A stretch of 63,535 nt of DNA, filler included, from Octopus bimaculoides (Eukaryota): the NCBI RefSeq assembly GCF_001194135.2. It is 6 parts of 6 records of this genome, joined end to end, with 100 filler letters (N's around TTAATTAATTAA, not from the genome) between each part and the next. Parts side by side here need not be neighbours in the genome. Positions count along the whole stretch, not along the records: positions 54,990 to 63,535 come from NC_068981.1; 5 more parts are not named here. One strand, given 5' to 3'. A program made the translations under genes and the position numbers. This document shows, one piece after another, positions 54,890 to 63,535 of this stretch (the first letter of the stretch is position 1; every line of letters starts with the position of its first letter). Below the pieces are notes generated by a model. It was not told where the DNA came from. It worked only from the letters and a program-made list of their open reading frames with translations, and did no database searches.

Positions 54890-55366
54890 NNNNNNNNNNN
54901 NNNNNNNNNNNNNNNNNNNNNNNNNNNNNNNNNTTAATTAATTAANNNNNNNNNNNNNNNNNNNNNNNNNNNNNNNNNNNNNNNNNNNNGCCTGCTACAA
55001 ACAGCAACACACTATCAACTCAGTAATACAATCCAAACAAAACACTCCACAAACACAAGACACATTCTACATAGCAAATATCCAATAAAATAAACAACCA
55101 TCAGAAGACTGGATACACAACTCGCATTACACACACAATACAAAATACAAACACTAATACAACAAAAGACTGCAACCAGACCCCATAACAAAAAAAACAA
55201 ACAAACTGATACAATATAATACTGGAAAGAGTTTACACTCTCCCAACAACAACAAAAAAGAACACACAATGCTGCACACACCTCAGTAACACGTGGATGT
55301 AGCAGGTGATGCAGTAGAAATTTGCCTGAAACTACCAAATGTTTAATAATAATAATAATAATGATG

Positions 55367-55421
<55 letters not shown>

Positions 55422-55514
55422 TAATAATAATAATAATAACCACCCTTACATTAGCATGTAAGAGTTAATATTGCTATAATAAATCTTACTGTGATAACAA
55501 TGTTTTAATATTTC

Positions 55515-56215
55515 AATGATGTTTATGCTGAATAAAATAAGTACCAGTGGAGCACTGGGGTCGATGTAATGGACTTTGCCACTCTCCTGATATTGCTGGC
55601 CTTGTGCCAGAATTTGAAACCAGAATTCCAGTGATGTTTATGGTCAATAAAATAAGTACCAGTTGAGCACTGGGGTTGATGTAATTGACTTTGCCACTCT
55701 CTGGAAATTGCTGGCCTTGTGCCAAAATTTGAAACCAGAATTCTAGTGATGTTTATGGTCAATAAAATAAGTACCAGTTGAGCACTGGGGTCGATGTAAT
55801 TGACTTTGCCACTCTCCTGAAATTGCTGACCTTGTGCCAAAATTTGAAACCAGAATTCCAGCTATGTTTATGGTCAATAAAATAAGTACCAGTTGAGCAC
55901 TGGGGTCGATGTAATTGACTTTGCCACTGTCCTGATATTACTGGCCTTGTGCCAAAATTTGAAACCAAAATTCCAGTGATGTTTATGGTCAATAAAATAA
56001 GTACCAGTTGAGCACTGGGGTCGATGTAATTGACTTTGCCACTCTTCTGAAATTGCTGGCCTTGTTCCAAAATTTGAAACCAGAATTCTAGTGATGTTTA
56101 TGGTCAATAAAATAAGTACCAGTTGAGCACTGGGGTCGATGTAATTGACTTTGCCACTCTCCTGAAATTGCTGGCCTTGTGCCAAAATTTGAAACCAGAA
56201 TTCCTCTGATGTTTC
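55515..56215 (+). repeat. Tandem array of about 6 x 115 bp derived from the 3' half of SINE family B
   Basis: aataaaataagtaccag starts at 55531, 55646, 55761, 55876, 55991 and 56106 (exact 115-bp period). The unit matches the reverse complement of 52165-52275. Confidence 0.95.
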
Positions 56216-56420
56216 TATTATTTATTATAATTAATAGAGATTGTATTTACTTAGTATCATTTAAATGTTGATTATAATTTTCTAATTGCTAATGTATTAT
56301 AATAATTACATATAACTTTGTCTTCAAATACTTTTCTGTCTTGACCAACTGAACTCCCCATCTCACCCCTAATCCCCCACCAACGAAATGATTTTATCTT
56401 TTTATTTTTTCATAATTTAG

Positions 56421-57947
56421 TTGTGCTGGACGTTTGTAGCAGAGGTCATATACTGCAAAATGTGGAGTTGGATGTTCAGCCATTCTGGGAACCATCTGAA
56501 GAAAATACCATCTCAAGACAGCAAGTCTATGACTATTTAGTACCTTCCAGGTTCCATCTGACTTTTTTAAAGACACATAAAATCATAGTTAATGACCAAT
56601 TAAAGAAATGGGCTGAAGTTCTTTGGAGAGATTCCAAGTTTAATAAACTGAAATTAAATTATTCTGAAGGAAATTTTGAGGAAATTGAACAGTCTTTGAA
56701 AGATTTATTAAATTCCATTACTGTTGAAACTATTGATGTTCCAACCGATATTTTTGAAGACATTGTTAGAATATTTAACAGTCAAGTTGATAAGATGTAT
56801 TTTTATTTTGATTACCAAAACTGCCAAGCTAATATTTTGGGATTTAATAAAAGTAATGTGATTAAAATGAAAAACAGACTTTTGGATCATTTTAGAAGGA
56901 TATGTGAGTATGATTTAAATATTCATGAAAGACGTATTCTATCTGGTCACAGATTTTTTGAGCAGGCACAAAGACAATCTGAAGATCTACAAGTTAGAAT
57001 TCATGGTGACAAAGTTATTTTTGAAGGCCAGTCTTCTGAAATAACTAATTGTCAAAAGGATATGAATAAAATACTCCAGGCAGTTGTAAAATCTAAACTG
57101 TGTTTACCTTTAAATGCTGGAATGATCATAAATAAAAAACCAGTGAAAGAATATCTTGATGAAAAACTGAGAGGCAAGAAATGTATTGGTTCCTGGGAAC
57201 CAGGTAATGGTGATTCAGTATTACTTTATGCAAGTGATAAAAGACATCTTTCAGATTTGGAAAAAGTTATGAAACAAAGTTTTGTTGCCAATACATTGGA
57301 TTTTGTAGACAAAATTAAGGGTACTCCAAATCATGGAAAGTGGTTGACATTTGTTGAAAGTCTAAAAAAAGAGTTTCCAAATTCCCATTTTATTGGAGAA
57401 GATTCTATTGTTGCTGTTGATGCAATAATTAATGATATAAAAAGCAAAATTGATAACTTTGAGCAATCGTTAACTTATGAATCTTATATATCGATGCCTC
57501 TTGAACATTTCCTCTTTCTTAAAGAGTTCAAAGAACAGGAAATCAATGACTTTGGTGAGAAAAATAAAATGAAGAATGTGTGTCTCAAAGATAATAAGTT
57601 ACACGTGGAAGGAACACAAAAAAAAATTAGGAAAATGGAAACATTTATAGGAAATCTAAGAAAAGATATCAGCTCAAAAGAAGTAAACTTTGAAATGTTT
57701 GGATTTCAAGAATTTCTGGAAAGTGAAGCAGGAAAGAATTTCTTATGTGAAATGCAGAATGAATCTGAGAGTATAATATCATTAAATTCAGATTTAGGAA
57801 GTGAAACAGAAGAAATACTTAATTTTAAGTATAAAAACTGTGAAATAGTGTTGAGGGAAGGTGACATCACAACTCTGGACACAGATGCTATTGTTAATGC
57901 TGCAAATGGCAGACTGGAACACATGAGAGCAGCCATTGTGCAGAAAG
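56421..57947 (+). CDS. PARP14: Large internal exon of a macrodomain-PARP (PARP14/PARP9/PARP15 family): RRM C-terminal end, probable KH-like region, N-terminus of a macrodomain
   Basis: Stop-free 509 codons with a pyrimidine-rich acceptor (cataatttag|tt) and donor (aaag|gttagt), phase 1/1. The N-terminus GHILQNVELDVQPFW resembles RRM ends in this family. The C-terminus EIVLREGDITTLDTDAIVNAANGRLEH is a macrodomain signature. The symbol is a best family match; orthology versus PARP9/15 is untested. Confidence 0.88.
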
Positions 57948-57992
57948 GTTAGTCATACCATTTTTTATAGTTTAACGTTTCTTTTCAGATCC

Positions 57993-58150
57993 ATGTGTGG
58001 TTGAGAAGCTTACTTCCTGACCATGTGGTTTCAGGTTCAATCCTACTCATAGCATTTTGGACAAGTGTCTTCTGTTGTAGGTCAATGGTTGGCCAAAGCC
58101 TTGGAAGTGGATTTCGTTGATAGAAACTGAAAGAAGCTCATCGTCCTTGC
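57993..58150 (+). mobile_element. SINE family A, 5' half (intronic, CpG-decayed)
   Basis: gtgtggttgagaagcttacttcctgaccatgtgg...ttttggacaagtgtcttct...ggccaaagccttggaagtggattt...gaaactgaaagaagc. Confidence 0.82.
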
Positions 58151-58519
58151 ATACATATAAATATATATATGTATATATATGTGGAGGGGGAGTAGCAAGA
58201 TCTTGACAGCACACGATGGTTGTAAATGAACATCACCATCACACAAGTGATGTTGTGTCATTTCCAGTCTTCCATGAAAAACATGTCTGACCATGGGGAA
58301 ATATTCCCTCATTTGGAAACATGTGACACTTGGCTACAGGAAGGACATCCAACCATGGACAAGAAATTATGGTGGTGGTGATTTCTATTTGTGTAACAAT
58401 AATCGTTTATAGAGTTGAGACACTTGATCACTGACCAGTCCCTATAATCTGGATAATTATAAATGTTGAAGATATGCTGTGCTCGAGAAGACCTCACAAG
58501 CCAAGTGAGACCATAGCCC

Positions 58520-59126
58520 ATGGCCTATACCAGTGAGTAACCAGCCCACCTACGAATACCCTTCATTCATTGGACAATAAACTCTACTTGCAAAGACTTA
58601 GTGAGGCAAGTGAAACCCAAATCAAAATCGCTGACGTGGCCGATAACAGTACCGCCTGATTGGCACTCGTGCCAGTGGAATGTTAGAGGCAGATCTGAGC
58701 ATGATCGTTGCCAGGGCCTCGAATTGGCTCCTGTGCCGGTGGCACATAAAGAAAGCAGCATTCGAGTGTGATCGTTGCCAGCATCGCCTTAGTGGCACAT
58801 GTGCCAGTAGCACATGAAAAACAACATTTGCGTGTGGTCGTTGCCAGTGCCGCCAGAGTGGCTCCCATGCAGGTAGCATGTAAAAAAAAAACACCTTTTG
58901 AGCATAGTCATTGCCAGAACCGCCTGACTGGCCCTCGTGCCGGTGGCATGTAAAAAGCACCCATTACACTCATGGAGTGGTTGGCATTAGGAAGAGCATC
59001 CAGCTGTAGAAACTTTGCCAGATCAGATTGGAGCCTGCTGCAGCCTTCTGGCTTGCCAGACCTCAGTCAAACCATCCAACTCATGCCAGCATGGGAAGCG
59101 GATGTTAAATGACGATGATGATGATG
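58520..59126 (+). mobile_element. RTE-type 3' region with five diverged 66-70-bp hairpin units and a (GAT)n tail
   Basis: Units begin with g[a/g]tcgttgccag. The 3' end catccagctgtagaaa...catgccagcatgg...gttaaatgacgatgatgatg is shared with the RTE tails at 62100-62150 and 63410-63510. Confidence 0.75.
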
Positions 59127-59199
59127 TTGTCATCAACATTTACATTCCATTTAAATAAACTTTTGTCTGATGCAATGCTGGTCTCTTCTTCTGTTACAC

Positions 59200-60235
59200 A
59201 TCATTCCATACCACTCGTTTCTCTTATGCTTCTATGTAGTTGCTCATCCTACTTTCCCCTCTCTTATCTCCTCTCTATCATTCACACCCATCATTCTTTG
59301 CCATGTTACTCTTCCTCTTATCCTTATTCCCCCCTTTTTTTTTTCTCCATTTCACTCTTAAACTCTCCTACAATAATCAACTGCAAATGTTTGCCAAGTC
59401 CTGAACTACAATTCAAGAAATATTGTTGTTCAGGTTTGGAAAGCATCCCTTTCCTTCGAATGCACCCACAACCTACTGGCCTGTTGCTCTTTCCCCTATC
59501 ACATCACTCAGTCGGAATTCCTCCCTTTGCTCTTCCCTACACTGCCATACATGTCCCTTCTTCTCTAGCACCACCATATTCACTGGTGCCCATGACTGCT
59601 TCCTTGCCATCACTGATTCCTTCTCTGGCACCTCCAGTCATCTGATTTACTGCATCCTCTTCTCTCTTTGCCATTCCTCATACATTGGACAGACTGGTTG
59701 CTGCCTGGCTGACTCTTTGCTGACACCTTGGTCTTGTGCCATTACTGCTTGATTGGTCATTCCTTGCAACATCTGTCCATGTTCAGACTGGTTTTGCATA
59801 GAGGCTACCCAGACTCCTGTCTCCATCTGGAAAGGGAAATAATTCTCCCGCTCTGTAGTGGTTAAGAGCACAGGTTATTAACCCCAAGATTCCGAGTTCG
59901 ATTCCAGGCAGCGACCTGAATAATAATAAAAATAATAATAATAACATCGAAAATACCTTAGGAATGAGAACCCAGGTTCAAAATTTCCCCAAGACGCCTG
60001 ATGAAGGCTGGAGGGTATATCATGCGAAACGTTGTGCTAACAACAAACAAGATGAGGACAAATATCTGTCAAATGTAAATAATGTACTCTGACACATGTT
60101 TCTTCTTTTCTCTCTCTTCTTCTATTCTTTCTGTCAAAGAGTAGGCTCAAAATGGTAAACACTTCTATTCTCTCTAAGCATAAAGTTGATACACTATTTT
60201 CCTTTACCTCATCATCATGTTATTTATAATTTTTG
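59200..60235 (+). mobile_element. Second Penelope-like element (Cys-rich linker, GIY-YIG, terminal repeat), interrupted by a SINE at 59850-60086
   Basis: ORF 59423..59752: CSSLHCHTCPFF...ITDSFSGTSSHLIYCILFSLCHSSYIGQTGCCLAD (GIY-YIG), then HSLQHLSM...LHLEREII. A decayed hammerhead-type repeat ctgtcaaagagtaggctcaaaatggtaaacac lies at 60131. Confidence 0.8.
59850..60086 (+). mobile_element. tRNA-headed SINE (family C) carrying a minimal hammerhead ribozyme motif
   Basis: A box tagtggttaag, B box gagttcgattcc, (AAT)n linker, then gacgc-CTGATGA-A-ggctg...catgc-GAAAC-GTT-gtgct (59993-60038). Confidence 0.8.
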
Positions 60236-60253
60236 CACCACACACACACAAAT

Positions 60254-62150
60254 ATATGTAGGAAAGGAGTTGGAAGTAATTCCATTTGCTGCACCCAGTG
60301 TAAACCATGGAAACATAAGAGATGCTGTGGAATCACAGGTAGATTAACAGATAAAGTCGTCTTTATATGTGGCAGATGTGCAGGAACTATAAGCACTCAG
60401 AGCACACGGGGCTTAGATTCTTTCAAATATCCAGGAGGTTCTCTTGAGGTTGTAGGCAGTTTCTGTTTCCCAAGTGACCAAATTAGCCATGGTGGAGGAT
60501 GCTCTGGAAGTATTATTTCTAGAATAAGAATTGGGTGGAGGAAGTTCAGAGAGCCATTACCTCTGTTGGCAGAATGAAAGGTAGACTCTATGATGCTTGT
60601 GTTTGAACGGCTATACTCCATGGTAGTGGGATATGGGCTCTGAGTACAGAAGGCATGCGTAGACTGGAGAGAAATGAAGGCGGTATGCACCATTGGATGT
60701 GAAACAACAGTGCACATGTATGGCAAAGTGCAAATGTATTGAGAGAAAAATTGGGCATAAGAGGAATCAAATGTAGCTTGCAAAAGAGAAGACTACATTG
60801 GTTTGGACATGTGATGTGTATGAATGAGGACAGCTGAATAAAGAAGTGCTGATCATTGAAAGTGGATGGTGTCCACAGAAGAGGGAGACCCAGGAAGACA
60901 TGGGATGAAGTGGTAAGGACTGATCTCAGGAAGTTGGACCTCATGGAGGAAATGACAATTTACTAAGATGCCTGGCGATATGAAGTTCTTGAGAAGACCC
61001 AGCCACATCAGCAAAACTGAATTCTCACACACCCTACCCCAACAAACCAATCTGCATCTCTACATTTCTTCTCTTCCTCACATTACTGCTTCATGCCCTT
61101 GGATTACATCCCACTCCTGTCCCCTTGGACCTTTGTCACTGTATCATTGCTCTCCACTTGCTCCTGACCTGTGTGTCCTACCCACATGTCCTTCTTAGTC
61201 TATTATTGCTATCTGCTAGCCCCCGACCTATGTGTTCCACCCACACATAACTCCTTCATACATTATGCTTAGCTCTCACTCCCCAATCCTGTCCTCACAC
61301 CCGTTCCTCTGTATCATTGCTATCCAGTAGCCTCCCCCACCACCACCAACTCCATACATCCCCAGGTCTTTCACCACTTACTCGCACTTTTTAATCACAC
61401 TTACTTCACAATATCTTGTTACTTATATTATGGCATTTGAACCTCGAAGGTATGCCCTGGCACTTGCCACCATCTATACCTCTTTCTTCCTTTACTCAAC
61501 CATCCCATTTATATTCTGATCCCTGACCATTGTGAGTATGCCCAGCACTTTGCCACCATCTCCATCCTGCTGTCTCCCACTCTCTTTCCTTCTCCTGCAC
61601 TTCCCTCGGGTTGAGCAACCGTGTATTCTCTCTGTGGTAGCACACCTGTTTCTGTCTTCATTCCTGATCTCTCTCTCTCTCTCTCCGGCCAGGTAACTTT
61701 GTACTTCCTCTTCAGCTACACACCTGTATCTGTCTCGCTATAACCTTTTCATCATCACCTCCTCCAATGCCTCCTCCCCCTTAAAAGTTTTTGTCTTGCA
61801 AGTACTTGGTGACCCTGTCAGTGCAGATGCTACTTAAAAGCTTCCAGTGCACACTCTAAAGTCGTTGGTGCTCAGAAGGGCATCCAGCTGTAAAAACCTG
61901 GCCAAAAGTGACCTCACCTGTGCTTGTGACACACAAAAAGCACCACTCACCTCACCTGTGCTTGTTCCATGAAAAAGGCATTAAGTCCACTCTGCTGGCT
62001 GGTTGGTGTTTAAAAGGGCATCCATCTGTGAAAATCCTGACAAAACAATCACAGAAGTCTGGTGCAGGTTTTAGCTTCGCCAGCTCCCATGAAACTGTCC
62101 CATCCATGCTAGCATGGAAGGCAGACGTTTCAAATGATGATGATGATATC
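60254..62150 (+). mobile_element. RTE/BovB-type LINE 3' portion (RT C-terminus with Cys/His finger, long 3' UTR, (GAT)n tail)
   Basis: ICRKGVGSNSICCTQCKPWKHKRCCGI...FICGRC...RIRIGWRKFREPLPLL; KGRLYDACV*TAILHGSGIW; RRLHWFGHV...RRGRPRKTWDEVVRTDL; tail catgctagcatggaaggcagacgtttcaaatgatgatgatgat. Confidence 0.88.
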
Positions 62151-62670
62151 TTCATCATTTAATCTATTGTCCATGCTGGCATGGGTTGGACAGTTTGACT
62201 GAAGCTGCACCAGTTTCCAGTCTAATTTGGCTTGGTTTCTAAGGCTGGATGCCCTTCCAAATGCCAGCCACTTTACAGTGTGTGCTGGGTGCTTTTAACT
62301 TGGCATCACATGAGCGTTTACACGTGACACTAGTACAGGACTCTTGTAAGCCAATCTTTTCCCCCAGGGGGAGCAGCCTTAGCACTTCTGCTGAGGAGGA
62401 CAGGTCTTCATCAGCACAGGTATCTCGGTCCTTTGTCATCTCATCCTCAAGGTTCACCATTCTGAGGTTCTCCTTCAGTACTTCGTCCTATGTTTTCCTG
62501 GGTCTCCCTCTTCCACAAGTCTCATCCACTTTGAATGAACGGCACTTCTTTGTGCAGCTGTCAGCATCCATCCACATCATGTGACCAAACCAGCGCTCTC
62601 TTCTCTCGCAGACTGCATCCAATTCTTCTTCTGACGAACTTCTCTCTCAATACACTAACGCACTGTTGCA
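62150..62670 (-). mobile_element. Second RTE-type 3' fragment, inverted relative to 60254-62150
   Basis: The minus strand gives RWFGHMMWMDADSCTKKCRSFKVDETCGRGRPRKT and the tail gaagggcatccagcc...cccatgccagcatggac...aaatgatgaagat. Confidence 0.85.
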
Positions 62671-62874
62671 TATATATATACATATACACACACGTATGTA
62701 TGTATACAAGTAATGTGTTATAGAATTAAAATACAATATATATATTGATATAATATAACAACATGCATTTATAATAATATATATCTATATTAATATATAA
62801 TGTAATATATTACATATGTTAACATATATTAACATGTATTAAACAGGAACATAAGAAAGCTAATATCTTTGCAG

Positions 62875-63123
62875 GTGGGATTGGAATTCAAGCTGAATCC
62901 AATGAAATTATGAAACAAAGAAGGATTGAACTGAAACCTGGAGAAGTAGTGTCAACTAAAGCTGGTAAACTCAAATGCAAGACTATCATTCATGTTGTTG
63001 GACCTGTTTGGAATAATGGACGGAACCATGAAATATTTCACCTTTCAAGAGCTGTTCAAAATTGTTTGGCATTTCTTGAAGAAAAGTCTTACACGTCAAT
63101 TGCAATTCCTGCTATCAGTACAG
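62875..63123 (+). CDS. PARP14: Next exon of the PARP14-like gene: central macrodomain
   Basis: Acceptor tctttgcag|gt and donor acag|gtaaga, 249 bp, phase 1/1, in frame with the exon ending at 57947. Translation: GIGIQAESNEIMKQRRIELKPGEVVSTKAGKLKCKTIIHVVGPVW...AVQNCL...YTSIAIPAISTG (HVVGP and SIAIPAISTG macrodomain motifs). Confidence 0.93.
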
Positions 63124-63279
63124 GTAAGAATTTACCATTTTTATTCTGCTCAAATTATTCGGCATAGAAATAGTAATTACAATATTTAGCCAATAGTAAG
63201 GCAACTATCCTGTCCCTCTATCATACTCTAACCTCTCCCCTGGCACCCATCCACTTCCCTTGGTTTCACCCCCCCCCCT

Positions 63280-63512
63280 CAACTAAAATTCTTTGTCCTG
63301 CAAGTAACTTGACAACCCCACATTTTACGTGGCACCAGCACCTGTGATGGTGTCACATAAAAAGCACCCAGTGCATTCTCTAAAGTGGTTGGAATTCTCT
63401 AAAGGAAGGGCATCCAGCCATAAAAACTGTACCAAAAGAGAAAATTGGTGCCTGGGCAGCTCTCCGGCCTTGCCAGCATCGAAAACAGATGTGAAATGAT
63501 GATGATGATATT
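63280..63512 (+). mobile_element. RTE-tail-derived short element
   Basis: ttctttgtcctgcaagtaact...gtcacataaaaagcacccag...gaagggcatccagcc...tgccagcatcgaaaacagatgtgaaatgatgatgatg. Confidence 0.7.
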
Positions 63513-63535
63513 ATATATATATTATTGTAGAAGAT

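What the first reader, a model, noticed from the sequence alone, without database searches (positions are those of the whole stretch)
57860..57947. PARP14-like macrodomain lacks the conserved diglycine loop (clean 3-codon deletion)
The sequence reads GDIT...AIVNAANGRLEH-MRAAIVQKG. The family pattern is N-A-[AS]-N-x-x-L-x-H-x-G-G-[LVG]-A-x-A-[IL] (human PARP14 macrodomain 1 from recall: VNASNEDLKHYGGLAAAL). Between H and AI, exactly three residues including both glycines are absent, while the frame, splice sites and downstream motifs (HVVGP, SIAIPAISTG) are intact. This loop binds the distal ribose, and mutating it is known to impair ADP-ribose binding or hydrolysis. The result may be a pseudo-macrodomain or decoy in an immune gene family known to evolve rapidly. 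A-to-I editing of AGA (57926-57928) would restore one Gly; that is speculative.
Basis: partly seen in the sequence, partly recalled or inferred. Interest (0 to 1): 0.72.

Follow-up and report, generated by a model that had tools for sequence, protein, structure and literature searches.

The report
Octopus PARP14-like macrodomain missing glycine loop
One copy of a tandemly duplicated octopus PARP14-like immune gene has a very recent 9-base in-frame deletion that removes the glycine pair needed to cleave ADP-ribose, most likely an eraser-dead, decaying duplicate, not a new kind of domain.

Summary
The piece is Octopus bimaculoides chr CM046601.1, in the gene RefSeq calls PARP14 (XP_052829884.1). 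Exon 56421-57947 ends ...AIVNAANGRLEH-MRAAIVQKG and splices to exon 62875-63123. HMMER and MAFFT place a 3-residue gap where human PARP14 macrodomain 1 has YGG and bacterial homologues have GGG.

The deletion is unique. It is absent from 12 other octopus relatives, from 58 prokaryotic homologues, and from 424 other macrodomains in about 160 PARP14-like proteins. Human G832 maps inside the missing segment, and G832E abolishes macrodomain-1 hydrolase activity.

At DNA level the lesion is a 9-bp deletion plus an adjacent G>A change (GGA>AGA), so it is not a clean three-codon loss. The comparison copy is a tandem paralogue starting about 13 kb downstream of the fetched locus, about 96-98% identical, which keeps the glycines. 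The lesion is therefore very young.

AlphaFold keeps the fold (TM 0.91 to PARP14 MD1) with lower confidence at the loop.

Best reading: a real, recent lesion that kills the eraser activity in a redundant, fast-evolving duplicate. The gene model also lacks macrodomains 2 and 3 and half of the transferase domain, but the assembly is full of gaps.

An adaptive decoy role, an assembly artefact and a dead pseudogene are not excluded. Rescue by RNA editing is unlikely. Interest is modest.

The parts
56421..57947 (+). Large coding exon ('exon A') of the O. bimaculoides PARP14-like gene (XP_052829884.1). It is 509 codons with no stop. It encodes the region between the RRM and the macrodomain, plus the first 37 residues of macrodomain 1.
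   Evidence: ORF 56423-57952. The acceptor is ag at 56419-56420 and the donor is AAAG|gttagt. It is 100% identical to P0123/P0135.
57836..57947 (+). N-terminal part of macrodomain 1: strands beta1-beta3 (NCEIVLREGDITTLDTDAIVNAAN), the shortened loop 1 and the start of helix alpha1.
   Evidence: Pfam Macro E=8e-22. Alignment to human PARP14 MD1. AF2 model secondary structure.
57926..57928 (+). AGA (Arg) codon at the deletion junction. It is derived from GGA (first Gly) by G>A. The 9 bp that follow in the paralogue (GGAATTGCA, coding G-I-A) are missing here. The exact junction is ambiguous within 57926-57929 because of AG microhomology.
   Evidence: DNA alignments with the tandem paralogue L002 and three O. 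vulgaris copies.
57948..62874 (+). Intron of 4.9 kb, full of interspersed repeats.
   Evidence: Splice sites. Repeat matches scattered over L001/L002.
62875..63123 (+). Next exon ('exon B') of macrodomain 1: GGIGIQAES...HVVGPVWNNG...SIAIPAIST. The donor is ACAG|gtaaga.
   Evidence: It is 93% identical in DNA to the paralogue's exon and flanks.

Best explanation
This is a real and very recent germline lesion in one member of a tandem cluster of PARP14-like genes in Octopus bimaculoides. The lesion is a 9-bp in-frame microdeletion with 2-nt microhomology, plus an adjacent G>A substitution.

It changes the macrodomain-1 catalytic loop from N-x6-GG-I-AAAI to N-x6-R-AAI. That removes the glycine pair that packs against the distal ribose and holds the catalytic water in MacroD-type hydrolases.

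The domain should still fold. It should have lost ADP-ribosylhydrolase ('eraser') activity, and its ADP-ribose binding is probably weakened. These functional consequences are inferred, not shown.

The lesion is most likely tolerated because intact paralogues sit next door. It looks like a neutral or mildly deleterious step in the birth-and-death turnover of a fast-evolving immune gene family, not a selected new function.
For: **Locus.**
- The piece is identical to L006 70515-79060 on chr CM046601.1.
- Both the 2015 gene model and the current RefSeq model carry HMRAAIV.

**Age of the lesion.**
- The tandem paralogue LOC106880777 lies in a locus that starts about 13 kb downstream of L006. Its alignable exon and intron DNA is about 96-98% identical to the window's.
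- The 175 nt before the lesion show only 2 mismatches. The paralogue keeps GGA GGA ATT GCA.
- Three O. vulgaris copies also keep GGN GGN RTT GCN.

**Uniqueness.**
- Unique among 12 other octopus relatives, 58 prokaryotic homologues and 424 other macrodomains.
- Among 150 MD1-like domains, 114 have GG and 139 keep the second Gly.

**Function of the lost residues.**
- N(6x)GG[V/L/I] and G[V/I/A][Y/F]G define MacroD-type hydrolases. PARP14 MD2 and MD3, which are inactive, lack both motifs (PMC10470015).
- G832E, the second Gly of YGG by my mapping, abolishes PARP14 MD1 hydrolysis and raises cellular mono-ADP-ribosylation (PMC10499325).
- The loop glycines contact the substrate carbonyl and the catalytic water (PMC7050489).

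**Structure prediction.**
- The AF2 model has pLDDT 95.9 and TM 0.91 to 3VFQ, so the fold is kept.
- pLDDT drops to 91/87 over residues 31-50 and helix alpha1 is three residues shorter. The intact paralogue model gives 97/96 over the same residues.

**Selection.**
- The macrodomain N-terminus is constrained among O. vulgaris copies (dN/dS 0.09-0.34).
- The window copy against its paralogue gives 0.73 overall and 1.15 in exon B.
Against: - No reads, cDNA or population data could be examined. Reality and fixation of the allele are unproven.
- The reference is a gap-ridden short-read assembly, and the piece is bounded by N runs.
- The 509-codon exon is still open and every other macrodomain motif is intact. 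Some function, such as a reader or scaffold role, may therefore be preserved or selected.
- The dN/dS counts are small (36 differences in total). They cannot separate relaxation from positive selection.
- A Gly>Val change in OiMacroD cut catalysis only fourfold and left binding intact (PMC7050489). Loss of binding is therefore not certain.
Confidence: 0.55

Rival explanations
1. Adaptive loss of the eraser. The deletion is retained because a hydrolase-dead macrodomain 1 is useful. It could act as a pure reader or decoy that resists or traps viral factors. Alternatively it could make a PARP14-like writer that no longer removes its own marks, like human G832E, which increases mono-ADP-ribosylation.
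For: - The large exon is open and the other motifs are intact.
- The family is fast-evolving and tandemly expanded. The literature links PARP14 duplication and positive selection to virus conflict (PMC13224862).
- G832E raises cellular ADP-ribosylation (PMC10499325).
- Two O. sinensis copies also replace the first Gly (HWCG, HIDG), and one O. vulgaris model lacks IVNA. This hints at recurrent tinkering at this site.
Against: - The lesion is confined to one copy in one species and is younger than about 3% paralogue divergence. There is no evidence it has been tested by selection.
- The O. sinensis variants keep the G832-equivalent glycine.
- The gene model ends after 78 of 199 PARP-profile positions and lacks MD2/3. 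A 'hyperactive writer' may therefore have no writer domain.
Confidence: 0.15
2. The whole locus is already a pseudogene or gene relic, and the loop deletion is just one of its lesions.
For: - Models P0123/P0135 have a single macrodomain. They stop at ...CHKNGKYIFSKWQQ, inside the transferase domain (PF00644 at 22.4 bits, below the 26.7 cut-off).
- No further catalytic exon lies within 10 kb downstream.
- dN/dS against the paralogue is about 0.7-1.15.
- The neighbouring paralogue has itself lost 1.1 kb of the large exon.
Against: - No stop or frameshift occurs in 509+83 codons, and the splice sites are canonical.
- RefSeq models the gene as protein-coding.
- The missing exons may simply lie in assembly gaps. 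L006 has 30 N runs, including 79061-81006, 82963-83713 and 103964-105246.
- With only about 2% lineage divergence, an intact ORF is weak evidence either way (my estimate).
Confidence: 0.15
3. Assembly or gap-closing error, or a rare heterozygous allele of the sequenced animal, and not the species' sequence.
For: - The reference is a heavily gapped short-read assembly, and the 8.5-kb contig is flanked by N runs.
- The two gene models that show the deletion rest on the same contigs, as far as I know, so they are not independent.
- A nearly identical paralogue nearby could confuse local assembly.
Against: - The lesion lies mid-contig, 2.9 kb and 5.6 kb from the gaps.
- The sequence there is not a homopolymer or a long repeat.
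- Mixing reads of the two paralogues would give the intact sequence. It would not give a novel 9-bp deletion plus a substitution.
- The in-frame length and AG microhomology look like a genuine slippage or end-joining deletion (inference).
Confidence: 0.12
4. A-to-I RNA editing of AGA (57926) recodes Arg to Gly and partly restores the loop.
For: - AGA derives from ancestral GGA, so editing would recreate the ancestral residue.
- Coleoid cephalopods recode extensively (established knowledge).
Against: - The 5' neighbour is G, the least favoured for ADARs (established knowledge).
- The predicted local RNA structure is ordinary (z=-0.89), and the site sits in an unpaired stretch of the minimum-energy fold.
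- The edited product HMGAAI is still three residues short and lacks the G832-equivalent glycine.
Confidence: 0.03

Closest known systems
Human PARP14 macrodomain 1 (PDB 3Q6Z, 3VFQ) and PARP9 macrodomain 1 (9QYD): MacroD-type mono-ADP-ribosylhydrolases
   Same: - Best sequence match (E=2e-42 for 3VFQ, E=4e-28 for the single-domain 3Q6Z) and best fold match (TM 0.91-0.92, rmsd 1.6-1.8 A, 34-36% identity).
- It shares the Asp of DxxVNAxN, the Asn, the loop-1 His, HxVGP and the loop-2 GIFG.
- It occupies the same position in a PARP14-type protein, which has RRM_PARP14_3 upstream and a PARP domain downstream.
   Different: It lacks three residues of loop 1, including both glycines of N-x6-GG[VLI]. 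The second of these is the equivalent of G832.
Engineered hydrolase-dead mutants: human PARP14 G832E and Oceanobacillus iheyensis MacroD G37V (PDB 5LAU)
   Same: The same loop and the same glycines are hit. G832E blocks the active site and raises cellular mono-ADP-ribosylation (PMC10499325). G37V lowers catalysis but keeps binding (PMC7050489).
   Different: Those are single substitutions made in the laboratory. Here nature removed three residues and put an Arg at the first Gly position, and no activity has been measured.
Naturally non-catalytic macrodomains: PARP14 MD2/MD3, PARP9 MD2, macroH2A1.2 and macroH2A2
   Same: They have the macro fold without the MacroD catalytic motifs. PARP14 MD2 and MD3 act as ADP-ribose readers (PMC10470015, PMC13224862). 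macroH2A1.2 and macroH2A2 do not bind ADP-ribose (my own knowledge, Kustatscher et al. 2005; not checked here).
   Different: Those are old, conserved states with a loop 1 close to full length: 0 to +1 residue in most of the 426 domains, and at most a 2-residue gap elsewhere. This one is a young, single-copy 3-residue deletion in an otherwise MD1-type sequence.
Tandem PARP14-like gene clusters in invertebrates (amphioxus, sponges)
   Same: Clustered, fast-evolving duplicates (PMC13224862). Here the gene and LOC106880777 are neighbours on O. bimaculoides chr CM046601.1, and at least five O. vulgaris loci lie on one chromosome.
   Different: I found no description of the cephalopod cluster or of this lesion in the papers searched. 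That is a limited search, not proof of absence.

Membership tests
Macro domain (Pfam PF01661) | Profile match above the curated cut-off | tested here: met
   77.8 bits for the window-encoded part and 94.1 bits for the whole domain, against a cut-off of 22.
Macro domain (Pfam PF01661) | Three-layer alpha/beta/alpha macro fold | tested here: met
   AF2 model with pLDDT 95.9 and pTM 0.91. Foldseek TM 0.91 and rmsd 1.6 A to PARP14 MD1-MD2 (3VFQ). This is a prediction, not an experiment.
MacroD-type ADP-ribosylhydrolase (includes PARP14/PARP9 MD1 and coronavirus Mac1) | Loop 1 (catalytic loop) motif N-x6-G-G-[V/L/I] | tested here: not met
   The window has N-GRLEHM-R-A-A. The three gapped columns are Gly in 58/58, 47/58 and 57/58 homologues. 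The motif definition is from PMC10470015.
MacroD-type ADP-ribosylhydrolase (includes PARP14/PARP9 MD1 and coronavirus Mac1) | Loop 2 (diphosphate loop) motif G-[V/I/A]-[Y/F]-G | tested here: met
   STGIFGIP is present in P0123/P0135 and aligns to human SSGVFGFP (G924-F926). It is encoded by the next exon, outside the piece (L006 82600-82782).
MacroD-type ADP-ribosylhydrolase (includes PARP14/PARP9 MD1 and coronavirus Mac1) | Conserved Asn of NAAN, adenine-binding Asp, and His/Glu in loop 1 | tested here: met
   D(TD)AIVNAAN and LEH are present and align to the human DVVVNASN and LKH.
MacroD-type ADP-ribosylhydrolase (includes PARP14/PARP9 MD1 and coronavirus Mac1) | Hydrolysis of mono-ADP-ribosylated substrates | not testable with these tools
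   This needs a recombinant protein assay.
PARP14-type protein (RRM - KH region - MD1-3 - WWE - ART) | N-terminal PARP14-type RRM | tested here: met
   PF23085 RRM_PARP14_3 is recorded for P0135. The same family was scanned and found in paralogue P0131. The RRM exon lies outside the window piece.
PARP14-type protein (RRM - KH region - MD1-3 - WWE - ART) | Three consecutive macrodomains | tested here: inconclusive
   Only one Macro hit in P0123, and no MD2/MD3 exons were found in L006. N runs sit exactly where such exons would be expected (79061-81006, 82963-83713). O. sinensis relatives have 2-3 macrodomains (P0132, P0134).
PARP14-type protein (RRM - KH region - MD1-3 - WWE - ART) | Complete ADP-ribosyltransferase domain (H-Y-hydrophobic triad) | tested here: inconclusive
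   PF00644 scores 22.4 bits, below the 26.7 cut-off, covering profile positions 3-78 of 199. The model ends ...LWHGT...CHKNGKYIFSKWQQ. No later exon lies within 10 kb, but gaps are present.
Pseudogene | Frameshifts, premature stops or broken splice sites | tested here: not met
   None in exon A (509 codons) or exon B (83 codons), and the splice sites are canonical GT/AG.
Pseudogene | Neutral substitution pattern (dN/dS about 1) and no expression | tested here: inconclusive
   dN/dS is 0.73 overall and 1.15 in exon B against the paralogue, from only 36 differences. Expression is not testable here.

The most novel reading that the evidence does not exclude
The deletion is fixed and expressed in O. 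bimaculoides. It makes a natural 'eraser-dead' PARP14-like paralogue. Its macrodomain 1 has become a non-hydrolysing reader or decoy, or a writer that cannot reverse its own marks. It would be retained within a tandem immune-gene cluster as a regulatory or antiviral variant, the natural counterpart of the human G832E separation-of-function mutant.
Probability: 0.12. Interest if true: 0.6.

Novelty: new variant of a known kind. Interest (0 to 1): 0.3.

Why it matters
PARP14 macrodomain 1 was recognised only in 2023 as an eraser that limits PARP14's own antiviral ADP-ribosylation. A naturally eraser-dead copy would be a ready-made separation-of-function allele. It would also be an example of how tandem PARP14 clusters diversify in invertebrates that lack interferon.

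As it stands, the evidence points to a very young lesion in a redundant duplicate within a gappy assembly. Its main value is as an annotation caveat: the RefSeq 'PARP14' of O. bimaculoides probably lacks MD1 hydrolase activity. It is also a cheap hypothesis to test by PCR and a simple enzyme assay.

Tried and rejected
1. **Alternative splicing or a micro-exon restoring the loop: rejected.** In the paralogue and in three O. vulgaris copies the nine bases lie inside the same continuous exon.
2. **Alignment artefact, or the GG of QKGG compensating: rejected.** That GG aligns to the conserved downstream G-G/A-G (human AAG). phmmer, MAFFT and the DNA alignment all place the gap after His-Met.
3. 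**The two O. bimaculoides copies as mis-scaffolded alleles: rejected.** They differ by about 3% in sequence, by a 1.1-kb exon deletion, by tandem-repeat copy number and in their upstream exons. O. vulgaris also has several copies.
4. **First protein search with the last 243 residues: misleading.** It missed the identical protein P0123 and the paralogue, so absence from that word-indexed search cannot be taken as evidence. The second search, with the whole exon, found them.
5. **O. vulgaris locus L001: no use.** It did not reach the upstream exon.
6. **P0001 and P0123 could not be fetched as DNA**.
7. **Finding the missing transferase exons.** I searched L006 and L002 with an O. sinensis C-terminus and found nothing beyond the CGKN exon.
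8. **Independent transcript or read evidence.** None of the tools holds octopus reads or transcriptomes.
9. **Editing rescue.** I checked the sequence context and the RNA fold only.
10. **Literature search for cephalopod PARP14.** It gave nothing relevant.

Full report
**What is there**

The 8.5-kb piece (window 54990-63535) is identical to Octopus bimaculoides assembly GCA_001194135.2, chromosome CM046601.1 (locus L006 70515-79060). It is a single contig bounded by N runs.

It holds two exons of a gene that RefSeq calls 'protein mono-ADP-ribosyltransferase PARP14'. The current model is XP_052829884.1 (P0135, 1032 aa). The 2015 model is XP_014786360 / A0A0L8FW12 (P0123).
- Exon A runs from 56421 to 57947. 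It is 509 codons without a stop and ends at AAAG|gttagt.
- A repeat-rich 4.9-kb intron follows.
- Exon B runs from 62875 to 63123.

The spliced product reads ...NCEIVLREGDITTLDTDAIVNAANGRLEHMRAAIVQKGGIGIQAESNEIMKQRR...HVVGPVWNNG...SIAIPAIST. It matches Pfam Macro at E=8e-22.

**Checking the observation**

phmmer against all PDB chains gives human PARP14 macrodomain 1 as the best match. It places a three-residue gap right after the His, opposite 'YGG' of PARP14 and 'GGG' of E. coli YmdB.

A MAFFT alignment with 58 prokaryotic homologues (34-42% identical) shows the three gapped columns as Gly in 58/58, 47/58 and 57/58. None is gapped.

All 12 other octopus relatives found have H-x-G-G-[VI]-A-A-A-I. 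These are seven O. vulgaris proteins, four O. sinensis proteins and one O. bimaculoides paralogue (two models). There are two substitution variants in O. sinensis, HWCG and HIDG.

An exhaustive HMMER search of 1.84 billion cluster representatives gave 150 top hits, mostly long multi-macrodomain PARP14-like proteins. I realigned these and the octopus relatives to the intact paralogue's domain.
- Of 426 macrodomains, only the two models of this one gene have a three-residue gap in this segment. Nearly all the others have the same length or one extra residue.
- Of the 150 best-matching (MD1-like) domains that cover the loop, 114 have GG and 139 keep the second Gly.

**What the lesion is at DNA level**

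The nearest relative is the tandem paralogue LOC106880777 (P0131). Its locus L002 starts about 13 kb downstream of L006 on the same chromosome. Alignable exon and intron DNA of the two copies is about 96-98% identical, and the 175 nt before the lesion differ at only two positions.

- Paralogue: CAC ATG GGA GGA ATT GCA GCA GCC ATT.
- Window: CAC ATG AGA GCA GCC ATT.
- Three O. vulgaris copies read GGN GGN RTT GCN at the same place.

The simplest account is a 9-bp deletion (GGAATTGCA, with AG microhomology) plus a G>A change that turns the surviving GGA (Gly) into AGA (Arg). Because it sits inside a stretch that is almost identical between the paralogues, the lesion is younger than the duplication or last gene conversion. 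It cannot be shared with other species.

**Functional meaning (inferred)**

MacroD-type hydrolases, including PARP14 and PARP9 macrodomain 1, are defined by N(6x)GG[V/L/I] in loop 1 and G[V/I/A][Y/F]G in loop 2. Both motifs are absent from the non-catalytic PARP14 MD2 and MD3 (PMC10470015).

G924 and F926 fix the numbering of chain 3Q6Z_A. On that numbering, human G832 is the second Gly of YGG, which lies inside the missing segment. G832E abolishes MD1 hydrolysis and markedly raises cellular mono-ADP-ribosylation (PMC10499325). The loop glycines contact the substrate carbonyl and a candidate catalytic water. A Gly>Val change in OiMacroD lowered catalysis fourfold without loss of binding (PMC7050489).

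The remaining determinants are intact: the adenine-binding Asp, the Asn of NAAN, the loop-1 His, HVVGP and loop-2 GIFG. The last is encoded by the next exon, outside the piece.

AlphaFold2 comparison of the two copies:

| | Window domain | Intact paralogue |
|---|---|---|
| Mean pLDDT | 95.9 | 96.3 |
| pLDDT, residues 31-40 / 41-50 | 91 / 87 | 97 / 96 |
| Helix alpha1 | 43-49 | 43-52 |

The window model has pTM 0.91, and Foldseek gives TM 0.91 to 3VFQ and 0.92 to PARP9 MD1. In the model the Arg and the following Ala take the places of the two glycines.

I therefore expect a folded domain without eraser activity and probably with weaker ADP-ribose binding. None of this is measured.

**Gene and family context**

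The family is tandemly expanded. O. bimaculoides has two neighbouring copies. O. vulgaris has at least five loci on one chromosome.

It evolves fast. dN/dS is 0.63-0.96 over exon A, while the macrodomain N-terminus is constrained among O. vulgaris copies (0.09-0.34). The window copy against its paralogue gives 0.73 overall and 1.15 in exon B, from only 36 differences.

Polarising the seven exon-B amino-acid differences with the O. vulgaris sequences assigns two or three to the window copy and four to the paralogue. The window copy is not evolving unusually.

Both copies show decay-like features.
- The paralogue has an in-frame 1.1-kb loss inside exon A.
- The window gene's models have one macrodomain only.
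- They also stop after 78 of 199 PARP-profile positions, reading into what is an intron in relatives.
- No later catalytic exon lies within 10 kb downstream.

L006 contains 30 N runs, some exactly where exons would be expected. The true architecture cannot be settled here.

**Rivals**

- **Adaptive eraser-dead reader, decoy or hyper-writer.** Not excluded, but there is no sign of selection and perhaps no writer domain.
- **Pseudogene.** The truncated model and relaxed dN/dS fit. The open 509-codon exon and canonical splice sites do not. With only about 2% lineage divergence, an open frame is weak evidence either way.
- **Assembly artefact or heterozygous allele.** The assembly is poor, and the two models are, as far as I know, not independent. 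However, the lesion is mid-contig and in non-repetitive sequence. Mixing paralogue reads would not create a new deletion plus a substitution.
- **Editing rescue.** AGA does descend from GGA. But the 5' neighbour is G, the local fold is ordinary (z=-0.89), and the edited loop would still be three residues short.

**Verdict**

The evolutionary evidence points to a very young, copy-specific lesion in a redundant, fast-turning-over immune gene cluster. It does not point to an established pseudo-macrodomain class.

It is a new variant of a known kind, a PARP14-type MD1 without its catalytic glycine loop. Interest is modest until reads, transcripts and a simple enzyme assay are in hand.

Noticed in passing
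window 55344-55439 and 55510-56214: A (TAA)32 microsatellite, followed by a 115-bp unit repeated 6.1 times (93% matches), lies in the intron just upstream of exon A. The tandem paralogue has only about 1.3 units (L002 18515-18662), so the array expanded or contracted after the duplication.
   Followed up: partly
L002 18987-18990 (corresponds to window 56540-57651): The neighbouring paralogue LOC106880777 has an in-frame loss of about 1110 bp inside the large exon but keeps the glycine loop. Each of the two tandem copies carries a different lesion.
   Followed up: partly
window 57680-57745: This segment (EVNFEMFGFQEFLESE...NFLC) differs from the paralogue by two 9-nt indels. The paralogue's version (DGTFRSQ...) resembles other family members in O. 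vulgaris and O. sinensis. That suggests mosaic evolution by gene conversion within the cluster.
   Followed up: no
proteins P0126 (O. vulgaris), P0129 and P0132 (O. sinensis): Other family members also carry changes at the ADP-ribose site. P0126 lacks IVNA of the IVNAAN strand. P0129 has HWCG and P0132 has HIDG, so the first Gly is replaced and the second is kept. I did not check whether these are real or gene-model artefacts.
   Followed up: no
window 57948-62874 (e.g. 58466-59129, 60254-61003, 62000-62300): The intron is largely made of interspersed repeats that recur many times, on both strands, in the O. vulgaris and O. bimaculoides loci fetched.
   Followed up: no
L006 102026-102244 and downstream: Both gene models of this locus end by reading through a splice donor after ...CHKN, where relatives have CGKN followed by the next exon. 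This leaves the transferase domain half-finished. No later exon was found within 10 kb, but N runs at 103964-105246 and 111469-112244 could hide it.
   Followed up: partly
(tool behaviour): The word-indexed protein search with the 243-residue query missed the 100%-identical protein and the 92%-identical paralogue, both of which a second query found. Negative results from that tool should not be read as absence.
   Followed up: yes
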